From the IMG/VR virus record IMGVR_UViG_3300030099_004448, positions 62,001 through 126,000 of that record: a stretch of 64,000 nucleotides of DNA; one strand, given 5' to 3'. Under the pieces are notes generated by a model. The model did no database searches. It was not told the DNA's origin and was given only the letters and a program-made list of their open reading frames with translations. A program made the position numbers and the translations under genes. The first letter of the stretch is position 1. Each line of letters begins with the position of its first letter. Of the stretch, positions 10,660-17,685 are shown in pieces.

Positions 10660-10703
10660 AACTGTCCACTCGGAGGGTTTCTACCCTCCTTTTTTTGTAT
10701 AAT
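10660..10703 (+). promoter_or_regulatory. AACTGTCCAC-N28-TATAAT early-type promoter with embedded terminator hairpin
   Basis: AACTGTCCAC 10660-10669, GGAGGGT-TTCT-ACCCTCC-T7 at 10672-10696, TATAAT 10698-10703. Confidence 0.7.
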
Positions 10704-10724: not shown

Positions 10725-12866
10725 ATGAATCGCCACCAGATCAAATCTCAACTCGCCAAACTCCTCGCGACTGAGGATCTGGTGGTTGAACACAAACATG
10801 TCGAAACTGCATCCTTCAACGTCCACAGTCGTGTCCTGACCCTCCCTATGTGGGAGAAGGCATCCAACAGTGTCTATGACATGTTGGTGGGTCATGAGGT
10901 CGGACACGCTCTCTACACCCTTGACGAGAACTGGTTGGATCGGTACTACATGAATCCATCATTCTTCAATATCACAGAAGATGCACGGATTGAAAAGTTG
11001 ATGAAACGTAAGTATCCTGGTCTGCGTAAGTCCTTCTACAATGGATACCAGGAACTGTCTGAGAAAGACTTCTTTGATCTTGAGGGTCAGAACGTTTCTA
11101 AGATGGGACTTGCGGATCGAGTGAATCTGTATTTCAAGATTGGAAACTTCATTGAAGTTCCTTTCCATAATGATGAAGAAAAAGATATTGTCAAACAGAT
11201 TGGAGATGCAGAGACTTTTGAAGAAGCTCTGATCGCTGCACAAAGAATGTACGATTATTGCAATCAGAAGAAAGAGGAGAAGGAGACTGCGGTTCAACCT
11301 CCCGCACAGGTTCCTTCTGCAAGTAATAATGAGGAAAACAAGAATGAACCGATGGTTCCAAATCCTACTGATTCAGAACAGAAGTCTGAGTCTGACGAAA
11401 AGGAACAGAGTCAAGAATGGGAAGAGGAAGAGGTTGAAGAAGAACAGATTGAACTGGAGGAAAATACTTCTGATGATCTGGATGTGAAGACTGTTGATGG
11501 TCTTGAAGAAAAAATTCGTGATTTGGTAGATTCCAATGCTATCGAAACTTTCTATGTGGAAATTCCCAAAGTAGATCTCAAGAAAGTTATTGTTTCCAAC
11601 TCTGACGTTCATCAAGAGATCAATGAGTGGTGGAGAAAAACCGAAGAACACTATGGGGAACCTGATTCTTATGAAAAATTGTTTAGTGGTGTAGACGCAG
11701 AGTTCAAAAAATTCAAGAAGTCTGCACAGAAAGAAGTTGGTTATCTTGTTAAAGAGTTTGAGATGAAGAAATCTGCAGATGCATATTCACGAGCATCTAC
11801 GGCTCGCACTGGTGTTCTAGATTGTTCTAAACTTCATACTTACAAGTACAATGAAGATCTTTTCAGAAAAGTGACTCTCCTTCCTGATGGTAAAAATCAT
11901 GGATTGATCTTTGTTCTTGATTGGTCTGGATCTATGGGTAGTGTAATGCTCGACACCATCAAACAACTTTATAACCTGATTTGGTTCTGTAAGAAAGTTT
12001 CTATTCCCTTTGAGGTTTATGCTTTCACTAACGAGTGGTCTTATCGCGATTATGACAAAGACTATTATGTGGAAAAAATTCCTGGTTTCTTCAAAGTGGA
12101 TGAAACCTTCAATCTCATGAATCTGTTCACCCATAAAACTAATGGTCGAGATCTTGAACAACAGATGATCAACATGTTCAGGATTGCTGCACACTTCAGC
12201 TGCCGCAACTGGTCGGGTTATTTCTATCAGTATCCTAATCGTCTGAGTCTTTCTGGAACACCTCTCAATGAAGCTCTGATCTCACTGCACCAGATTATCC
12301 CTCAGTTCAAAACTCAAAATGAAGTTCAAAAAGTTCAGTGTGTTGTTCTCACGGATGGTGAAGCAAATGCTCTGAAGTATTACAAAGAGTTTCCGTCACG
12401 AAAGTCTGAGTCTGGTGAGCCTTACATTGGCGTGAATAATCCTTACTACAACGAAATTACTCTTCGAGATCGTAAACTTGGTAAGACTTATGGTTTCACT
12501 GGAGAATTTACCCAGTTCACTAATGTGATGCTTGAAAATCTTCGAGACAACTTCCCCAACACTAATCTTATTGGTATTCGTGTTTTGGATGGTCGGGATG
12601 CATGTAGCTTCATTCGTCGATACTATGGTGCAAACGGTTATTATGATAAGGTTGCAGAGTGGAAGAAAAATAAATCTTTTTCTATCGATGGTTCTGGATA
12701 TCAAAAGTACTTCGGATTGTCTTCAACTGCACTCTCCTCTGATTCTGAGTTTGAAGTGAAAGAAGATGCAACTAAAGCACAGATCAAAAGTGCTTTCAAA
12801 AAGTCTCTGAATTCTAAGAAAATGAATAAGAGAGTTCTTGGTGAATTCATTGATCTGGTTGCATAA
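10725..12866 (+). CDS. HExxH metallopeptidase-like + vWA domain protein (CobT-like partner of the CobS-like AAA)
   Basis: HEVGH, EDARIE, acidic linker, LDWSGSM MIDAS motif, GTPL, LTDGE. Confidence 0.88.
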   Translation: MNRHQIKSQLAKLLATEDLVVEHKHVETASFNVHSRVLTLPMWEKASNSVYDMLVGHEVGHALYTLDENWLDRYYMNPSFFNITEDARIEKLMKRKYPGLRKSFYNGYQELSEKDFFDLEGQNVSKMGLADRVNLYFKIGNFIEVPFHNDEEKDIVKQIGDAETFEEALIAAQRMYDYCNQKKEEKETAVQPPAQVPSASNNEENKNEPMVPNPTDSEQKSESDEKEQSQEWEEEEVEEEQIELEENTSDDLDVKTVDGLEEKIRDLVDSNAIETFYVEIPKVDLKKVIVSNSDVHQEINEWWRKTEEHYGEPDSYEKLFSGVDAEFKKFKKSAQKEVGYLVKEFEMKKSADAYSRASTARTGVLDCSKLHTYKYNEDLFRKVTLLPDGKNHGLIFVLDWSGSMGSVMLDTIKQLYNLIWFCKKVSIPFEVYAFTNEWSYRDYDKDYYVEKIPGFFKVDETFNLMNLFTHKTNGRDLEQQMINMFRIAAHFSCRNWSGYFYQYPNRLSLSGTPLNEALISLHQIIPQFKTQNEVQKVQCVVLTDGEANALKYYKEFPSRKSESGEPYIGVNNPYYNEITLRDRKLGKTYGFTGEFTQFTNVMLENLRDNFPNTNLIGIRVLDGRDACSFIRRYYGANGYYDKVAEWKKNKSFSIDGSGYQKYFGLSSTALSSDSEFEVKEDATKAQIKSAFKKSLNSKKMNKRVLGEFIDLVA

Positions 12867-12891
12867 ATATTATGAAATTAATAGGTAAACC

Positions 12892-13060
12892 CATGGGAAG
12901 ACTCTCTAGAGAACTATTGGGTGGTGGTGAACCAGCACCAGCACCAAAACCAGTAGCAAAGGCTGCACCGAAACCAGTTGCAAAACCAGAACCCAAAGAA
13001 CTAAAGGGTGAAGGTATGAAGACTGCTGCTTCTGAAGCACTCGGATCTGAAGACGAATAA
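12892..13060 (+). CDS. Small Pro/Ala/Lys-repeat protein
   Basis: PAPAPKPVAKAAPKPVAKPEPK; late-promoter-like CATAAATA at 12862; start could also be 12872 (internal ATG is at about 12893). Confidence 0.6.
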
Positions 13061-13073
13061 ATAAAAGAAAACA

Positions 13074-13430
13074 GTGAAAACCATGGACGCCCTCCAAACT
13101 TACGAAGTTATTAAAAACTATCTTCTAGAGAAAAAGTTTGCAACCACAGAAGAGGAAGCAAACGCTATTATTCTCAATATGGAGGAGTCCTGGTTTCAAC
13201 AAATTAATGAAGAAGAATCTGATCGTATGAAGGACCGCCGCATGGAGCGTGGTGGTGTTGGTGGTAATATTGATTACAGAAGACCACCTGCTGCACCAAA
13301 TACGTTTGGTAAGAAGAAACCTAGGAAAGATGGTATGTCTGCATTAGATAAAGTAAGAGCAGATATCGAAAAGAAATACGGTAAAGGTGCAATTATGGAC
13401 ACCAAGAAGAAAAAGGATAAAAAAGATTAA
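13074..13430 (+). CDS. Hypothetical late protein, probably internal head protein
   Basis: AATAAATA at 13056; NYLLEKKFATTEEEANAIILNMEESW...INE followed by a basic C-terminal module. Confidence 0.65.
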   Translation: MKTMDALQTYEVIKNYLLEKKFATTEEEANAIILNMEESWFQQINEEESDRMKDRRMERGGVGGNIDYRRPPAAPNTFGKKKPRKDGMSALDKVRADIEKKYGKGAIMDTKKKKDKKD

Positions 13431-13453: not shown

Positions 13454-14410
13454 ATGAAATTCGCAGTATTCTATTTCAGGATGGAGGGTGGTAAGATCCT
13501 TCCAATTACCTTTGACTTACAATCAAATAGTCTTAGGGAAAAGTGGATTGAACAAATCCGAATTAAAGAACAAGAAGAAGATGCATATCTGAATCTTAAG
13601 ATCACCAATAAAAATGTTGAGGATCTTCCATACTTAAAAAACAAACTAAACAGTATTGTTTCTCATATCAATAAACTGTACGAAACTGATAGACTCCCTT
13701 TGTTGGAGGGAGATCCCAGTGACATCGATCAGGACAAACTGAATCATCTTCATGAAATGTTTGAAGAGTATGGGGAAGAATCTTTGGATCCAGAAAGATT
13801 CCTCAGTGAAGAAGCTCATGAGACTTGGTTGAGTTTAAATGAGTGGATTCATATTACCGAGATTGCTATGAAGACATCTCCTGATATGTTTCCGTGTTAT
13901 AGTTGCCTTTGTTCAATATATCCTGCATACCCAGGTGAACCGCTTGATGAAGGGGATAAATTATTCTTAGATAGTGAATTTGCTTGGGGATCTTTATATC
14001 TCGGATATAATACCTTAGGTAAAGATTACTCCCATGCGATGTGTGACGATGATGTTCGTGTAATCCAGAATGGTCAAGTAAAAATTCAAACTCTGTACAG
14101 TACTGAGTGTTGGTTAAATTTCTCTCAAACACCATATATGTACAAAACTATGGAAGAGGATTTTTATCAGTGGTATTTGGAACAAGATGAAGAAACTAGG
14201 GGAATGATTCCCATCCACGATAGGGATAAACTTGCTCTTGGTAGGTATTACCTTGGTAGAGTCATTATTGACGAAACCTTTACAAGATTTAATCCAGACC
14301 TGGATGCATGGAGACATGATCCAGAACTACAAAAACGTTGGAATATTGAAGTCTTTTCTAAAATAGAAGAGTTTATTGGTATTGAAATTAGAGATGAATC
14401 AGATTCTTGA
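13454..14410 (+). CDS. Hypothetical protein with paired H-x2/3-E helices
   Basis: LNHLHEMFE, LNEWIHITE, LYLGYNTLGKD, GRYYLG; overlaps the next gene. Confidence 0.8.
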   Translation: MKFAVFYFRMEGGKILPITFDLQSNSLREKWIEQIRIKEQEEDAYLNLKITNKNVEDLPYLKNKLNSIVSHINKLYETDRLPLLEGDPSDIDQDKLNHLHEMFEEYGEESLDPERFLSEEAHETWLSLNEWIHITEIAMKTSPDMFPCYSCLCSIYPAYPGEPLDEGDKLFLDSEFAWGSLYLGYNTLGKDYSHAMCDDDVRVIQNGQVKIQTLYSTECWLNFSQTPYMYKTMEEDFYQWYLEQDEETRGMIPIHDRDKLALGRYYLGRVIIDETFTRFNPDLDAWRHDPELQKRWNIEVFSKIEEFIGIEIRDESDS

Positions 14411-16505
14411 AAAATTTATTTCCACATCTAAATCTAAAGAGTGGGAACCTACATTACCGTTACCTGAAGATATTTGGGATTCGGATTGGCCTTATCTAAG
14501 TATAGACTTTAAGGACAATTTTGCGGAAATGTATCGCGAGTGTGTTCAGAATGATGACATGTTCGTTGGACATAGGGAAAAAGACAAACACCTCAGTTAT
14601 TCTCATGAAGGGTGGAAGGGGTTGACTTTGCATGGTCTACGTCCAGATGCCACTGAAAATTATGATCAGTATGGTGGAAGTCCAGACCAATATAGATGGA
14701 CGAGTGCATGTCAAAAATTTCCTGCATGTGTAAAATTTTTGAAGAAACTTGGATATCGTAGATTTGATCGAGTTCGGATCATGAAGATCGAACCTGGCGG
14801 TCACATCATGCCGCATGACGATGGAGAAGGTAGAATCTTTGGTCCTCTAAACATTGCAATCAATAATCCACAGGGTTGTGGTTTCTACTTCAAAGATCAT
14901 GGAGAAGTTCCATTCAAACAAGGCAGAGGAATGTTCCTGGACATTGGAAACACTCATGCCGTTTATAATAATAGTAGTAAACCCAGGTATCATTTCATAG
15001 TACACGGGGACATAAACCCTAAGTTGGTTGAGGGTGCATATAAACAACTTCAGATGAGGTTGGAAGACAAAGATAGAAAGATCTGTTATGGGATCTATAA
15101 TCAACTCGATAGAATTGAGAATACTGCAATGTATCTTCGATTCAAAGGTTCTTCATTGTTCTACCTCAAGAGGGCACATAAACAGTCTGATATTTTCTTT
15201 GGAGACTCTATCAAAGAACTCCTAGAGACAACCGCAGATGCTGGATATGATTATTGTGTAGTTCTCGCTGCAGGAACTATTCTCAAAAGTTTTGAATATG
15301 ATAGAGAGATCCGAAACTTTATTATGAAGGATAAGGATTTTGGTGTTGCTGGTCATTGTCTAATGAAACCAGATCATTGGGCAGAACTTCATCATCAGTT
15401 CTTTATTGTCAATCTTCATGCATGGAAGGAAGTTGGTAGACCTGACTTTGGTACATGGCAAGGAGAGTCTGAAGAACTCCTACCTGTTTTGGAAAGAAGT
15501 GAAGAGAACTTCCATCATGACTATACTCCTCTATGGGTAAGAGTTAATAAAGATAAGAAGAGAACTAAACAACCATTTGCCGGTCAGGGGTGGGAACTTC
15601 TCAAAGCAATGTTTGAAGGCGGTTGGTCCGTTGTTATGTTGAATGAAACACTAAGACATAACAAGTTTTACCATTATCCAGAGCACGAGACTTCTCGATA
15701 TGAACAGTCATTGAAAACTATGACGACTTACGATAGTCAGAACTGGAATCAAAAGAAATCTATTGAAGACGCTTTATCTGTAAAGGATCAAATTTGGTTG
15801 TTTAATAGTGAGGATATGCGTGTATCAAATGAGGGTACTTTTGATCTTGCTGTAAATACTGCAAGCGGATTTAAGATTTTTGATCTCTTCAGACAAAAGA
15901 AACTTAATCCAAAATCCAAAATTGTTGTTTACGATTTTAATCAACGAAGTCTCGCTTGGTATAGACACTTATATGAGTGGGGCAGTACACCTGGGTTTGT
16001 GCAGGATGATTTGGGTAAACGACATCTAAATCTACTTGAGTGTATGAAGACATTCCAATATAAAGAAAACTTCACTTGGATTGGCAAAACTCATATTCCT
16101 CCTGATGAACAGGGTGATCAACATGATGACATGACTATATTCAAAGATGTTTCATTCATCAAATCTCTGAAAGATACTATCAATTATTTTGGTGGGTCTC
16201 AAAATTTTATAAATTATTGGACATGGTTCAGAGCTTGCAATGTGGAGTTCAAGAAGATTGATCTCTACAAAGAAACGGATAAGTTCTGTAAGATATTCAC
16301 AGGTAAAGGTAGAAAGTTTGTAAATCTATCAAACATCTTTTCTACAGACGCAACAAATCTTCTATACGGTCATACCGAGGTCCAACTCGCTCAACAGAGA
16401 TGTCTGTTCAATCTTTATTTGATTGATCCTGAAATCGAAGTAACTCTGTATGATTACTGGAATCGATGGAAGTACGGTAAGGTGAAGGATCTCATAGACA
16501 GTTGA
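14394..16505 (+). CDS. Multidomain enzyme: Asp/Asn beta-hydroxylase-like 2OG-Fe(II) domain plus two uncharacterised domains
   Basis: RVRIMKIEPGGHIMPHDD...LNIAINNP...HAVYNNSSKPRYHFIVHG in the first ~215 aa; ~490 further aa. Confidence 0.8.
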   Translation: MNQILEKFISTSKSKEWEPTLPLPEDIWDSDWPYLSIDFKDNFAEMYRECVQNDDMFVGHREKDKHLSYSHEGWKGLTLHGLRPDATENYDQYGGSPDQYRWTSACQKFPACVKFLKKLGYRRFDRVRIMKIEPGGHIMPHDDGEGRIFGPLNIAINNPQGCGFYFKDHGEVPFKQGRGMFLDIGNTHAVYNNSSKPRYHFIVHGDINPKLVEGAYKQLQMRLEDKDRKICYGIYNQLDRIENTAMYLRFKGSSLFYLKRAHKQSDIFFGDSIKELLETTADAGYDYCVVLAAGTILKSFEYDREIRNFIMKDKDFGVAGHCLMKPDHWAELHHQFFIVNLHAWKEVGRPDFGTWQGESEELLPVLERSEENFHHDYTPLWVRVNKDKKRTKQPFAGQGWELLKAMFEGGWSVVMLNETLRHNKFYHYPEHETSRYEQSLKTMTTYDSQNWNQKKSIEDALSVKDQIWLFNSEDMRVSNEGTFDLAVNTASGFKIFDLFRQKKLNPKSKIVVYDFNQRSLAWYRHLYEWGSTPGFVQDDLGKRHLNLLECMKTFQYKENFTWIGKTHIPPDEQGDQHDDMTIFKDVSFIKSLKDTINYFGGSQNFINYWTWFRACNVEFKKIDLYKETDKFCKIFTGKGRKFVNLSNIFSTDATNLLYGHTEVQLAQQRCLFNLYLIDPEIEVTLYDYWNRWKYGKVKDLIDS

Positions 16506-16551
16506 GGAACTGTCCACAGACTGTCCCAGGACGGAGGAAGTGCGTTATAAT
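16497..16551 (+). promoter_or_regulatory. GACAGTT-N4-AACTGTC palindrome / AACTGTCCAC-N28-TATAAT early-type promoter
   Basis: GACAGTTgaggAACTGTCCAC, then TATAAT at 16546-16551. Confidence 0.75.
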
Positions 16552-16575
16552 TTATTTGTTGAAACGACACAACTC

Positions 16576-17685
16576 ATGACTCGCCTCAAGATGACCGACG
16601 ATCAACTGATTGACTCCCTCAAAGATCTCTACGGAGAATCCGTCACCAGTGCTGACATCAAAGCCTGGTGTGCAATGAACAGTATGAGTTACCAGACTGT
16701 CTCCCGTCGTCTTGCCAACTACAAGGCAGGTCACGGGAAGTGGAACCTGGAAGTTACAAAAGAGACAGTTCAGGATCTGGAAGTAACTTATAATTCACCT
16801 GCAGCTATGCCTGCAATTGAACAAAACCTTATCCCACAGAAAGATGATTCCTTCATCAAGTTTGGCAACTTCACTGATGTTAAAAAAATTATTCAGTCCC
16901 GTCTATTCTATCCAACGTTCATTACGGGTCTTTCTGGTAACGGCAAAACGTTCTCGGTTGAGCAAGCGTGTGCTCAACTGGGTCGGGAACTCATCCGTGT
17001 AAACATTACTATTGAAACCGATGAAGATGATCTTATTGGCGGTTTCCGCCTTATTGATGGTAACACCGTCTGGCACAATGGCCCAGTCATTGAAGCCCTC
17101 GAACGAGGAGCTGTTTTGCTCCTTGATGAGATCGACCTCGCTAGTAACAAAATTCTCTGTCTCCAAAGTATCCTTGAAGGGAAAGGAGTTTTCCTTAAGA
17201 AAATCGGACGATGGGTTTCTCCTGCAAGTGGATTCAACGTCATTGCCACAGCCAACACTAAGGGTAAGGGTTCAGACGACGGACGATTCATTGGAACTAA
17301 CGTGCTCAACGAAGCGTTTCTAGAACGATTCCCTGTCACTTTTGAACAGGAATATCCCACTGCTTCCACTGAATACAAAATTCTCTACAAGGTTGGTGCC
17401 GAACTCGGTCTTGCTGAGACTGATTTCTACAAACGTCTTGCCGACTGGGCAGACATCATCCGCAAGACTTTCTATGACGGTGGTATCGAAGAAGTTATCA
17501 GTACCCGTCGTTTGGTTCACATTGTCAGGGCATATTCAATCTTTAAGGACAAAGCCAAAGCAATGCAAGTTTGTCTGAATCGTTTTGATGATGAAACCAA
17601 ACAGTCCTTCATGGAACTGTATGACAAAGTTGATGTTGACTTCCAGATGCCGTCTGAGAATGTTGACGACGTTCCCTTTTCTTGA
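16576..17685 (+). CDS. cobS: CobS-like / MoxR-type AAA+ ATPase
   Basis: GLSGNGKT, ETDEDDLIGG, LLLDEID, ATANTKGKG, NEAFLERF. Confidence 0.92.
   Translation: MTRLKMTDDQLIDSLKDLYGESVTSADIKAWCAMNSMSYQTVSRRLANYKAGHGKWNLEVTKETVQDLEVTYNSPAAMPAIEQNLIPQKDDSFIKFGNFTDVKKIIQSRLFYPTFITGLSGNGKTFSVEQACAQLGRELIRVNITIETDEDDLIGGFRLIDGNTVWHNGPVIEALERGAVLLLDEIDLASNKILCLQSILEGKGVFLKKIGRWVSPASGFNVIATANTKGKGSDDGRFIGTNVLNEAFLERFPVTFEQEYPTASTEYKILYKVGAELGLAETDFYKRLADWADIIRKTFYDGGIEEVISTRRLVHIVRAYSIFKDKAKAMQVCLNRFDDETKQSFMELYDKVDVDFQMPSENVDDVPFS

What the first reader, a model, noticed from the sequence alone, without database searches (positions are those of the whole stretch)
13454..16505. Two-gene modification cassette: hydroxylase + GT-like + Rossmann-like fusion with an H-x-E partner, inserted between the vWA and CobS-like genes
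Seen: 14394..16505 (703 aa) has an AspH-type 2OG-Fe(II) domain (HxD...H...R, ~aa 1-215). A middle domain (GYDYCVVLAAGT...VAGHCL...HHQFFIVNLHAWKEVG...HHDYTP) looks GT-A-like but lacks a clean DxD. The C-terminal region (AVNTASG...IVVYDFNQRSL...VNLSNIF) looks like a SAM-binding Rossmann fold. The overlapping upstream gene has two helical metal-ligand-like motifs (LNHLHEMFE, LNEWIHITE). Known: hydroxylate-then-glycosylate chemistry exists for proteins (mimivirus lysyl hydroxylase/glucosyltransferase, Skp1 PhyA/Gnt1) and DNA (TET/JBP plus GT). Inference: a three-step enzyme that modifies virion proteins, DNA or a small molecule. The last two domain calls are tentative.
Basis: partly seen in the sequence, partly recalled or inferred. 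Interest (0 to 1): 0.68.

Follow-up and report, generated by a model that had tools for sequence, protein, structure and literature searches.

The report
Phage hydroxylase–methyltransferase tailoring cassette with adaptor
Two overlapping genes of an uncultured marine cyanophage encode an iron/2-oxoglutarate hydroxylase fused to a degenerate sugar-transferase-like domain and a methyltransferase-like domain, plus a partner protein of a new family. Together they form the conserved core of a widespread, uncharacterised phage modification system whose target is unknown.

Summary
Window 13454-14410 (318 aa, "X") and 14394-16505 (703 aa) are real, overlapping, conserved genes between the vWA and CobS genes of a 239-kb T4-like cyanophage.

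**Domains of the 703-aa protein**
- An AspH-type 2OG/Fe(II) oxygenase. Pfam PF05118 matches, and H141, D143, H188 and R198 are invariant.
- A GT-A fold domain with no DxD and no conserved donor-binding half.
- A class-I methyltransferase-like domain whose SAM-site positions are invariant.

**The partner X**
- X is a cyclophilin-like barrel with an inserted three-helix bundle.
- The bundle carries invariant H100, E104, H133 and E136.

**New findings**
- X, AspH and the GT-A/MTase module ("M") occur together in all 31 viral lineages examined. 251 IMG/VR contigs encode M.
- The parts are joined by fusions in many combinations: X-AspH, AspH-M, M-AspH, M-X, X-radical SAM, M-B12 radical SAM and AspH-halogenase-M.
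- Outside cyanophages the trio usually sits next to N-twitch radical SAM genes. This phage carries those partner genes about 70 and 100 kb away.
- No cultured phage in GenBank carries X or M.

**Verdict**
- The best reading is a multi-enzyme hydroxylating and methylating pathway with X as a shared adaptor.
- The substrate is unresolved: a polypeptide is slightly favoured over a glycan or small molecule.

The parts
13454..14410 (+). Gene X (P0001, 318 aa). Cyclophilin-like beta-barrel with an inserted three-helix bundle (aa 54-141). The bundle carries invariant H100, E104, H133 and E136. A further invariant stretch is LGYNTLGKD (aa 183-191). Proposed shared adaptor or metal-binding subunit.
   Evidence: invariant columns; pLDDT 93; cyclophilins Z 8-10 over about 140 aa; Atlas PPIase cluster, TM 0.36; BFVD relatives; 744 cluster representatives. 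No Pfam, PHROG or NCBIfam match.
14394..15053 (+). AspH-type 2OG/Fe(II) oxygenase domain of P0002 (aa 1 to about 220). Fe ligands H141, D143 and H188; 2OG-binding R198.
   Evidence: PF05118; invariant residues; the profile reaches Cpz10 7v4f at E 3e-4, proline cis-4-hydroxylase, and human AspH weakly.
15069..15773 (+). GT-A-fold domain of P0002 (aa 226 to about 460). No DxD (A292-A293-G294 at that position). The conserved residues lie in its C-terminal half: H321, Q335, N340, and R368 to W381 (the 'ERSEENFHHDYTPLW' stretch).
15777..16505 (+). Class-I methyltransferase-like domain of P0002 (aa about 462-703, plus the stop codon). Invariant G492-F493-K494 in the loop after strand 1, and Y513-D514 at the end of strand 2. 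D623 is nearly invariant after strand 3. N647, I648, T651 and D652 are invariant after strand 4.
   Evidence: ESM features point to DUF7790/LIC_10091; 6ulo, INMT, PNMT
10725..12866 (+). Flank: vWA-domain protein (phrog_459). Left border of the insertion site; not part of the system.
13074..13430 (+). Flank: conserved basic cyanophage protein (P0248). Present in 150 GenBank cyanophage records that lack the cassette.
16540..17685 (+). Flank: CobS/MoxR-like AAA+ ATPase. Right border of the insertion site.

Best explanation
The two genes are the core of a conserved multi-enzyme tailoring system of marine phages. X (cyclophilin-like barrel plus a helical His/Glu cluster) is a shared adaptor. It holds the substrate, or a metal, for several oxidative enzymes. 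The N-terminal AspH-type domain of the 703-aa protein hydroxylates the substrate using Fe(II), 2-oxoglutarate and O2. The C-terminal module M is a SAM-dependent methyltransferase. Its GT-A-derived domain has lost sugar-donor binding and serves as a substrate-binding or cap domain. The fused enzyme therefore installs hydroxyl and methyl (possibly methoxy) groups rather than a sugar. Radical SAM partners carry out further steps. They are two N-twitch radical SAM enzymes and one 321-aa radical SAM enzyme. In most lineages their genes are adjacent to the trio; in this cyanophage they sit at genome positions 147.6-150.3 kb and 180.2-181.2 kb. The target is most likely a polypeptide (phage or host protein or peptide). 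Shown: the folds, the invariant catalytic-type residues, the co-occurrence and the fusions. Inferred: the adaptor role of X, methyl transfer by M, the order of steps and the nature of the substrate.
For: Folds and residues. Co-occurrence: 251 IMG/VR contigs encode M. In my HMM census, X, AspH and M are adjacent in every locus with enough flank. All 31 viral lineages (80% identity groups) have all three. Rosetta-stone fusions: X-AspH (P0101, 33% identity to X, E 1e-51); AspH-M (this gene); M-AspH in reversed order (L019); M-X (P0346); X-radical SAM of the 323-aa family (P0300, P0312, P0319, P0327); M-B12 radical SAM (P0105); AspH-Trp-halogenase-M (P0035). Partners: N-twitch radical SAM (NF033640, E 1e-100 to 1e-111) is adjacent in 26 of 35 lineages and the 323-aa radical SAM in 17. 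The own genome has both families at other loci, at 31-34% and 52% identity. X, M and the 321-aa radical SAM have no match in 50,697 GenBank phage records, so their presence and absence go together. Hints towards a polypeptide target: AspH is a protein-hydroxylase family; X has a peptide-binding (cyclophilin) fold and is fused to different enzymes in the way RiPP recognition domains are; L019 adds an S8 peptidase and four radical SAM genes; the fused B12 radical SAM is closest to RiPP C-methyltransferases (TIGR03975, E 6e-38, below its cut-off).
Against: No activity or ligand binding was tested. No MTase or GT profile matches M by sequence, so the SAM site is inferred from fold and motif positions only. 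The structural Z-scores (8-11) are only moderately above the tool's stated background of 7-8. No conserved precursor peptide was found in the clusters, and no Nif11 or NHLP leader in this genome. In this genome the N-twitch radical SAM genes lie in a GDP-fucose/fucosyltransferase/carbamoyltransferase island, which points to a glycan instead. The closest solved relative of the AspH domain by sequence is Cpz10, a small-molecule hydroxylase of a nucleoside antibiotic pathway (E 3e-4). The invariant His/Glu cluster of X could make it an enzyme rather than an adaptor.
Confidence: 0.5

Rival explanations
1. One reading: one polypeptide hydroxylates, then glycosylates, then methylates its target. The analogues are LH3, mimivirus L230 or PBCV-1 A064R.
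For: GT-A fold of the middle domain. The top Foldseek hits are COLGALT1, LH3 and mimivirus R699, at E about 5e-5. PBCV-1 A064R domain 1 is also among the hits, Z 9.3-9.8. Metal-independent GT-A enzymes without DxD exist (my own knowledge).
Against: There is no DxD at the canonical position (A292-A293-G294) and no conserved residue in the donor-binding N-terminal half. There is no GT Pfam or NCBIfam match. The LH3 match is to residues 294-540, which I recall to be its non-catalytic accessory domain. TM-scores are low, 0.18-0.27.
Confidence: 0.15
2. The system tailors a carbohydrate, glycolipid or small metabolite rather than a polypeptide. Candidates are a host surface glycan or LPS, a virion glycan or a nucleotide-sugar.
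For: Carbamoyltransferase is adjacent in 8 lineages, and APS kinase in L015. In the own genome the N-twitch radical SAM genes lie among GDP-mannose dehydratase, an epimerase, GT10 and GT11 fucosyltransferases, an FkbM methyltransferase and a carbamoyltransferase. The 321-aa radical SAM gene lies next to a mannose-6-P-isomerase-type cupin and a transaldolase. The AspH family includes LpxO (my own knowledge). The nearest solved relatives by sequence act on small molecules (Cpz10, proline hydroxylase). The MTase domain resembles small-molecule N-methyltransferases.
Against: T4-like phage islands mix unrelated auxiliary genes, so adjacency there is weak evidence. X has a peptide-binding type of fold. 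One cluster carries an S8 peptidase. No nucleotide-sugar-binding motif is conserved in M.
Confidence: 0.3
3. The system hypermodifies phage DNA or a tRNA: base hydroxylation followed by further decoration.
For: The pairing of a 2OG oxygenase with a transferase recalls TET/JBP plus GT. Radical SAM, SAM-dependent and 2OG enzymes also cooperate in wybutosine synthesis (my own knowledge). PTPS/QueD-like genes lie a few genes downstream in L004 and L011.
Against: The oxygenase is AspH-type, not TET/JBP or AlkB type. No DNA- or RNA-binding or base-flipping methyltransferase appears among the structural hits. No nucleotide-metabolism gene consistently co-occurs.
Confidence: 0.07

Closest known systems
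Human AspH / Pfam PF05118 aspartyl/asparaginyl beta-hydroxylase family (including bacterial members such as Cpz10, PDB 7v4f)
   Same: The N-terminal 220 aa match PF05118 above its gathering cut-off. They carry an HxD...H iron triad and an Arg ten residues after the distal His. A profile of the domain reaches Cpz10 and human AspH.
   Different: Sequence similarity is very remote: E 3e-4 to Cpz10 and 0.04-0.3 to human AspH. There is no TPR domain. The domain is fused or adjacent to X and M, which no characterised member has.
Multifunctional collagen lysyl hydroxylase LH3 with COLGALT1, and mimivirus R699 and L230
   Same: A 2OG oxygenase is combined with tandem Rossmann-type GT-A-like domains in one system. 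These are the top Foldseek hits for M. The GT-A domain of M aligns with LH3 residues 294-540 (Z 10), which I recall to be the DxD-less accessory domain.
   Different: The oxygenase is of another family (AspH-type, not P4H/LH type) and sits at the N-terminus. No catalytic GT domain with DxD is present. The second Rossmann domain here is methyltransferase-like. TM-scores are 0.18-0.27.
PBCV-1 A064R (capsid glycan rhamnosyltransferases plus a methyltransferase in one viral protein)
   Same: A viral multidomain protein with a GT-A domain (2p72, 2p73 and 2p6w among the hits, Z 9.3-9.8). That its C-terminal domain is a methyltransferase is my own knowledge.
   Different: A064R domain 1 has a working DxD and binds a UDP-sugar (my own knowledge). 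There is no oxygenase and no X partner. No sequence similarity was detected.
NNMT/PNMT/INMT small-molecule N-methyltransferases, and DUF7790 (LIC_10091 family, PDB 6ulo)
   Same: These are the best structural matches of the C-terminal domain (Z 8.4-10.7 over 168-193 residues). ESM features point to DUF7790. 'ASGFK' after strand 1 resembles the 'GSGPT' motif I of this family (motif recalled from memory).
   Different: There is no profile-level sequence match. A roughly 90-residue insert is present, part of it at low confidence.
RiPP maturation systems, where a recognition element is stand-alone or fused to radical SAM/SPASM and other tailoring enzymes (for example the proteusin toolkit)
   Same: One small domain (X) is found free or fused to different tailoring enzymes. 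The enzyme set is a radical SAM with an auxiliary-cluster domain, a B12 radical SAM C-methyltransferase-like enzyme, an Fe/2OG hydroxylase, a SAM methyltransferase, a halogenase and a peptidase.
   Different: X is not a PqqD-like RRE. No precursor peptide was identified. The hosts are phages, not bacteria.

Membership tests
PF05118 AspH-type 2OG/Fe(II) oxygenase | Profile match above the curated cut-off | tested here: met
   42.1 bits against a cut-off of 22.6, aa 66-203
PF05118 AspH-type 2OG/Fe(II) oxygenase | Iron-binding HxD/E...H triad and 2OG-binding Arg | tested here: met
   H141, D143, H188 and R198 are invariant in 69 distinct sequences and in alignment A3
PF05118 AspH-type 2OG/Fe(II) oxygenase | 2OG-dependent hydroxylation activity | not testable with these tools
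   Needs an enzyme assay
GT-A (GT2-like) Leloir glycosyltransferase | GT-A fold | tested here: met
   Z 9.5-10.8, rmsd about 3 A, 140-165 residues aligned with many GT2 and GT-A enzymes
GT-A (GT2-like) Leloir glycosyltransferase | DxD metal/diphosphate-binding motif after the central strand | tested here: not met
   The position reads A292-A293-G294, with G294 invariant. The only DxD in the domain (D313-K-D315) is not conserved
GT-A (GT2-like) Leloir glycosyltransferase | Conserved nucleotide-binding N-terminal half, or a family profile match | tested here: not met
   No column of aa 226-285 reaches 99% conservation apart from L277. No Pfam or NCBIfam GT hit even at E 10
Class I SAM-dependent methyltransferase | Seven-stranded Rossmann-like MTase fold | tested here: met
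   INMT 2a14 Z 9.1 over 168 aa, PNMT 6ws1 Z 8.4 over 168 aa, 6ulo Z 10.7 over 193 aa, spanning model residues 237-478. The Z-scores are moderate and the domain was not folded alone
Class I SAM-dependent methyltransferase | SAM-site residues: Gly-rich loop after strand 1, acidic residue at the end of strand 2, acidic residue after strand 3 | tested here: inconclusive
   Invariant G492-F493-K494 and D514, and nearly invariant D623, sit at the expected places in the secondary-structure map. No docking was done and no profile matches
Cyclophilin-type PPIase (PF00160), for X | Eight-stranded cyclophilin barrel | tested here: met
   More than 20 cyclophilins at Z 8-9.9 with 125-145 aligned residues. 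The best Atlas row is a PPIase cluster, TM 0.36
Cyclophilin-type PPIase (PF00160), for X | Family profile match or PPIase active-site residues | tested here: not met
   No Pfam hit at E 1. Identity to cyclophilins is 8-12%. Active-site residues were not compared
RiPP biosynthetic cluster | An identifiable precursor peptide gene and an RRE | tested here: inconclusive
   No small ORF family is shared across lineages. No Nif11 or NHLP leader occurs in the genome, but the NHLP search also found nothing in any control genome. ORFs under 50 aa were not examined

The most novel reading that the evidence does not exclude
X, AspH, M and the N-twitch and 323-aa radical SAM enzymes form a previously undescribed phage-borne post-translational modification machine. 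In it, a new cyclophilin-derived adaptor domain (X) plays the role that RRE domains play in RiPP pathways. It would deliver a phage or host protein to hydroxylating, methylating, halogenating and radical enzymes. That would make it a new class of virus-encoded protein or peptide maturation system, abundant in the ocean.
Probability: 0.3. Interest if true: 0.85.

Novelty: new variant of a known kind. Interest (0 to 1): 0.64.

Why it matters
X and M have no Pfam, PHROG or NCBIfam family, yet both are abundant in marine viromes. X has 744 cluster representatives at 50% identity, and 251 IMG/VR contigs encode M. Both are absent from every cultured phage record searched. The dense network of gene fusions defines a multi-enzyme system. 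It combines a 2OG oxygenase, a SAM-dependent module, radical SAM and B12 radical SAM enzymes and a halogenase, and its product is unknown. Finding the substrate would show what T4-like marine phages, cyanophages included, chemically modify during infection: virion proteins, host proteins or surface glycans. It would also explain why some environmental T4-like genomes carry up to a dozen radical SAM genes (PMC5332604, PMC7029224). It could yield new enzyme chemistry as well.

Tried and rejected
- **Family and sequence searches of solved structures.** Pfam, PHROG and NCBIfam on X and on the middle and C-terminal parts gave nothing. Sequence and profile searches of the PDB with P0002, A1 and A2 gave nothing meaningful.
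- **GenBank phages.** blastn and tblastn of the cassette, and tblastn of X, found no match.
- **Foldseek of X against the PDB.** Only low-probability topoisomerase rows appeared, which I rejected.
- **Complex prediction of X with the AspH domain.** The verdict was 'no answer' (score 0.00). This is not evidence either way.
- **ESM Atlas, named clusters, for X.** No usable hit.
- **Other unannotated cluster families as X paralogues.** hhalign found none. Only a 185-aa family is AspH-like.
- **Precursor peptides.** The Nif11 and NHLP leader searches of the genome were negative, and the NHLP model matched none of the control genomes, so that search is uninformative. No conserved small ORF runs across lineages.
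- **Genome-level co-occurrence of N-twitch radical SAM in five other triad-bearing viral contigs.** No hits, but those contigs are only 15-62% complete, so this is uninformative. The 233-kb JGI contig could not be searched.
- **P0248 (13074-13430) as a substrate or cassette member.** Rejected, because it occurs in 150 cyanophage records that lack the cassette.
- **LIC_10091 literature.** It concerns Leptospira surface and plasminogen-binding proteins and gives no enzymology.
- **Not done.** No reads or expression check was made.
Full report
**Setting**

The window is bases 62001-126000 of a 238,937-bp IMG/VR virus record. Its CobS-like AAA+ protein is 72-80% identical to those of Synechococcus myoviruses of the Kyanoviridae, so this is an uncultured T4-like cyanophage.

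On the + strand the gene order is as follows:
- vWA protein, 10725-12866 (phrog_459)
- a 62-aa ORF, 12872-13060
- a 118-aa ORF, 13074-13430
- X, 13454-14410 (P0001, 318 aa)
- the 703-aa protein, 14394-16505 (P0002)
- CobS, 16540-17685

X and P0002 overlap by 17 nt. A terminator-like hairpin precedes the vWA gene at 10672-10689. Only weak 5-pair terminator-like matches lie between the vWA and CobS genes, so co-transcription is plausible but inferred.

In S-SCSM1 and Bellamy the vWA and CobS genes are separated only by small variable genes, including a SAM methyltransferase in S-SCSM1. The site is therefore a variable insertion point. The 118-aa ORF occurs in 150 GenBank cyanophage records and is not part of the cassette.

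**The observation**

The AspH call is confirmed:
- PF05118 matches at E 1e-10, above its cut-off.
- H141, D143, H188 and R198 are invariant across 69 distinct domain sequences.
- R198 lies ten residues after the distal His. Human AspH has the same spacing, which I recall from memory.
- A profile of the domain reaches solved relatives only weakly: Cpz10 (7v4f, E 3e-4; a small-molecule beta-hydroxylase of caprazamycin biosynthesis, PMC9814697), proline cis-4-hydroxylase and human AspH.

**The rest of P0002 (module M, aa 226-703)**

With a 53-sequence alignment AlphaFold gives pLDDT 92 and pTM 0.86.

*Middle domain, aa 226 to about 460.* This is a GT-A fold. VIA gives Z 9.5-10.8 over 140-165 residues with many GT2 and GT-A enzymes, with LH3 residues 294-540, with mimivirus R699 and with PBCV-1 A064R domain 1. 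The top Foldseek hits are COLGALT1, LH3 and R699, at E about 5e-5 but TM only 0.2-0.27.

The conservation pattern argues against a Leloir glycosyltransferase:
- The DxD position is A292-A293-G294.
- The N-terminal, donor-binding half has almost no conserved residue.
- The invariant residues all lie in the C-terminal half and the linker: H321, Q335, N340, R368-W381, N450, N452-Q453, and Q466, W468, N471-S472-E473.
- No GT profile matches.

*C-terminal domain, aa about 462-703.* Its best matches are 6ulo (a Leptospira protein of unknown function, Z 10.7) and the small-molecule N-methyltransferases INMT and PNMT (Z 9.1 and 8.4). ESM features point to the DUF7790/LIC_10091 family.

Invariant or nearly invariant residues sit where a class-I methyltransferase binds SAM:
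- G492-F493-K494 after strand 1
- D514 at the end of strand 2
- D623 after strand 3 (nearly invariant)
- N647, I648, T651 and D652 after strand 4

I therefore read M as a SAM-dependent enzyme whose GT-A-derived domain is a substrate-binding or cap domain. This is inference; no ligand was modelled.

**Protein X**

X has no family in Pfam, PHROGs or NCBIfam. Its model has pLDDT 93. It is an eight-stranded barrel that aligns with more than twenty cyclophilins at Z 8-9.9 over about 140 residues. The best Atlas row is a PPIase cluster.

A three-helix bundle (aa 54-141) is inserted into the barrel. So are N97, N129, LGYNTLGKD (aa 183-191), D200 and R202. A metal site is plausible but untested.

BFVD holds ten uncharacterised phage proteins with this fold, including one from Agrobacterium phage Atu_ph07. 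A profile search of 1.84 billion representatives finds 744 clusters at E up to 0.001.

**A conserved, fusion-linked system**

Word-based searches found several kinds of relative:
- full-length AspH-M proteins of 669-717 aa
- stand-alone M of about 450 aa
- AspH-Trp-halogenase-M proteins of 1178 aa
- M-B12 radical SAM proteins of about 1170 aa
- roughly 540-aa proteins whose N-terminal 310 aa are X (33% identity, E 1e-51), followed by AspH

A scan of IMG/VR found 251 contigs that encode M, and I fetched 79 of them. With HMMs for X, AspH, the GT-A part and the MTase part, every locus with enough flank has all of them side by side. The usual order is X, sometimes a 323-aa radical SAM, AspH, then M.

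Grouped at 80% M identity there are 35 lineages. All 31 viral lineages have X, AspH and M.

Further fusions:
- M-AspH in reversed order (L019)
- M-X (P0346, 817 aa)
- X fused to a radical SAM of exactly the 323-aa family that sits between X and AspH (P0300, P0312, P0319, P0327; 35-38% identity)

X is therefore fused to three different enzymes, which is the behaviour of a shared adaptor or recognition domain.

**Partners**

Families adjacent to the trio across the 35 lineages:

| Family | Lineages |
|---|---|
| 435-aa radical SAM with an N-terminal twitch/SPASM-like domain (NF033640, E 1e-100 to 1e-111, above cut-off) | 26 |
| 323-aa radical SAM | 17 |
| carbamoyltransferase | 8 |
| Fe-S A-type carrier | 7 |
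| DUF6071 | 6 |

The five cyanophage-type lineages, all inserted between the vWA and CobS genes, lack adjacent radical SAM genes.

This phage's genome has them elsewhere:
- two tandem N-twitch radical SAM genes at 147,585-150,327 (31-34% identity to the cluster family)
- a 321-aa radical SAM at 180,187-181,152 (52% identity)
- a carbamoyltransferase at 138.7-140.2 kb

The 321-aa radical SAM, like X and M, has no match in 50,697 GenBank phage records. The N-twitch family has only 22-25% matches there, in Vibrio and Ralstonia phages. Presence and absence thus go together at genome level.

In cellular genomes only five loci were found: four Bdellovibrionota MAGs and one Flavobacteriales MAG. L016 has AspH-M-X, with X recognised by hhalign at 97.7% probability. 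L019 adds an S8 peptidase and four radical SAM genes.

**What it acts on**

This is not settled.

*For a polypeptide:*
- AspH is a protein-hydroxylase family.
- X has a peptide-binding type of fold and an RRE-like pattern of fusions.
- The enzyme set resembles RiPP toolkits. It comprises a radical SAM with an auxiliary-cluster domain, a B12 radical SAM nearest to RiPP C-methyltransferases, an Fe/2OG hydroxylase, a SAM methyltransferase, a halogenase and a peptidase.

*Against a polypeptide:* no precursor peptide family was found.

*For a glycan or small molecule:*
- Carbamoyltransferase and APS kinase are neighbours in some clusters.
- The own-genome N-twitch radical SAM genes sit in a GDP-fucose/fucosyltransferase/FkbM island.
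- Cpz10 is the nearest solved relative of the AspH domain.
- The methyltransferase domain looks like small-molecule N-methyltransferases.

*For nucleic acid:* almost nothing supports it.

My weights are roughly 0.4 for a polypeptide, 0.3 for a glycan or small molecule and under 0.1 for nucleic acid.

**Literature**

- Pelagimyophages are reported to have an aspartyl/asparaginyl beta-hydroxylase as a core gene. Radical SAM cassettes vary within their host-recognition cluster (PMC7029224).
- T4-like environmental genomes with up to 12 radical SAM genes plus Fe-S carriers were noted (PMC5332604).
- I found no paper that describes X, M or their linkage.

**Verdict**

The hydroxylase and methyltransferase-like calls stand. 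The glycosyltransferase step is unlikely. The 'two-gene cassette' is the core of a larger, partly dispersed system.
- It is a new variant of a known kind (multi-enzyme tailoring systems) built on two undescribed protein families.
- A complex prediction for X with the AspH domain gave no answer, so it counts neither way.

Noticed in passing
outside the window: own genome G000:C1:138,700-158,300 (locus L105): A glycan-type island. It holds a carbamoyltransferase, a GDSL-like protein, two N-twitch radical SAM genes, a GDP-mannose 4,6-dehydratase, an epimerase/reductase, GT10 and GT11 fucosyltransferases, an FkbM methyltransferase, an NAD-synthase-like protein and a UDP-glucose dehydrogenase.
   Followed up: partly
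outside the window: own genome G000:C1:179,260-182,412 (locus L106): The 321-aa radical SAM partner gene lies beside a 2OG-FeII_Oxy_3 protein, a mannose-6-P-isomerase-type cupin and a transaldolase.
   Followed up: partly
window 13074-13430: A basic, probably disordered 118-aa protein that is conserved in 150 GenBank cyanophage records. Another cyanophage lineage has a longer 224-aa version (L013:5312-5986).
   Followed up: partly
window 12872-13060: A 62-aa ORF rich in Pro, Ala and Lys repeats (PAPAPKPVAKAAPKPVAKPEPK). It has no family match, and whether it is a real gene was not tested.
   Followed up: no
L073:9158-11317 (IMGVR_UViG_3300049043_000117, 121 kb): Here X, AspH and M are split into six short ORFs. 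This is either a decaying copy or a frameshift-prone assembly.
   Followed up: no
L016:12191-14891 (Halobacteriovoraceae MAG): A GT2, a YdjC-type deacetylase and a B12 radical SAM lie in a row next to AspH-M-X. The trio resembles hpnI, hpnK and hpnJ of hopanoid side-chain synthesis, a resemblance I recall from memory.
   Followed up: no
protein P0095 (1.6-kb metagenomic contig): The first 60 aa are a genuine GT2 N-terminus (PF00535 positions 1-68, E 2e-15), joined to M from 'FGVAGH' onward. This is either a recombinant or an assembly chimera. There is only a single observation.
   Followed up: partly
L011:3844-4077, L057, L059, L061, L063: A conserved protein of about 75 aa ending in ...KYHARTAYH.FEFK..KDLEWFLLRWS lies directly upstream of the first N-twitch radical SAM gene in four lineages. 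Its function is unknown.
   Followed up: no
L015:4137-4622: Two tandem paralogous genes of 78 and 79 aa lie between the radical SAM genes of one cluster. They are possible small substrate or accessory proteins and are lineage-specific.
   Followed up: no
L086:4734-6041 and own-genome N-twitch radical SAM genes: In this radical SAM family the SPASM/twitch-like Cys-rich domain is N-terminal (aa 8-81) to the radical SAM core (aa 133-320). That is the reverse of the usual order.
   Followed up: no
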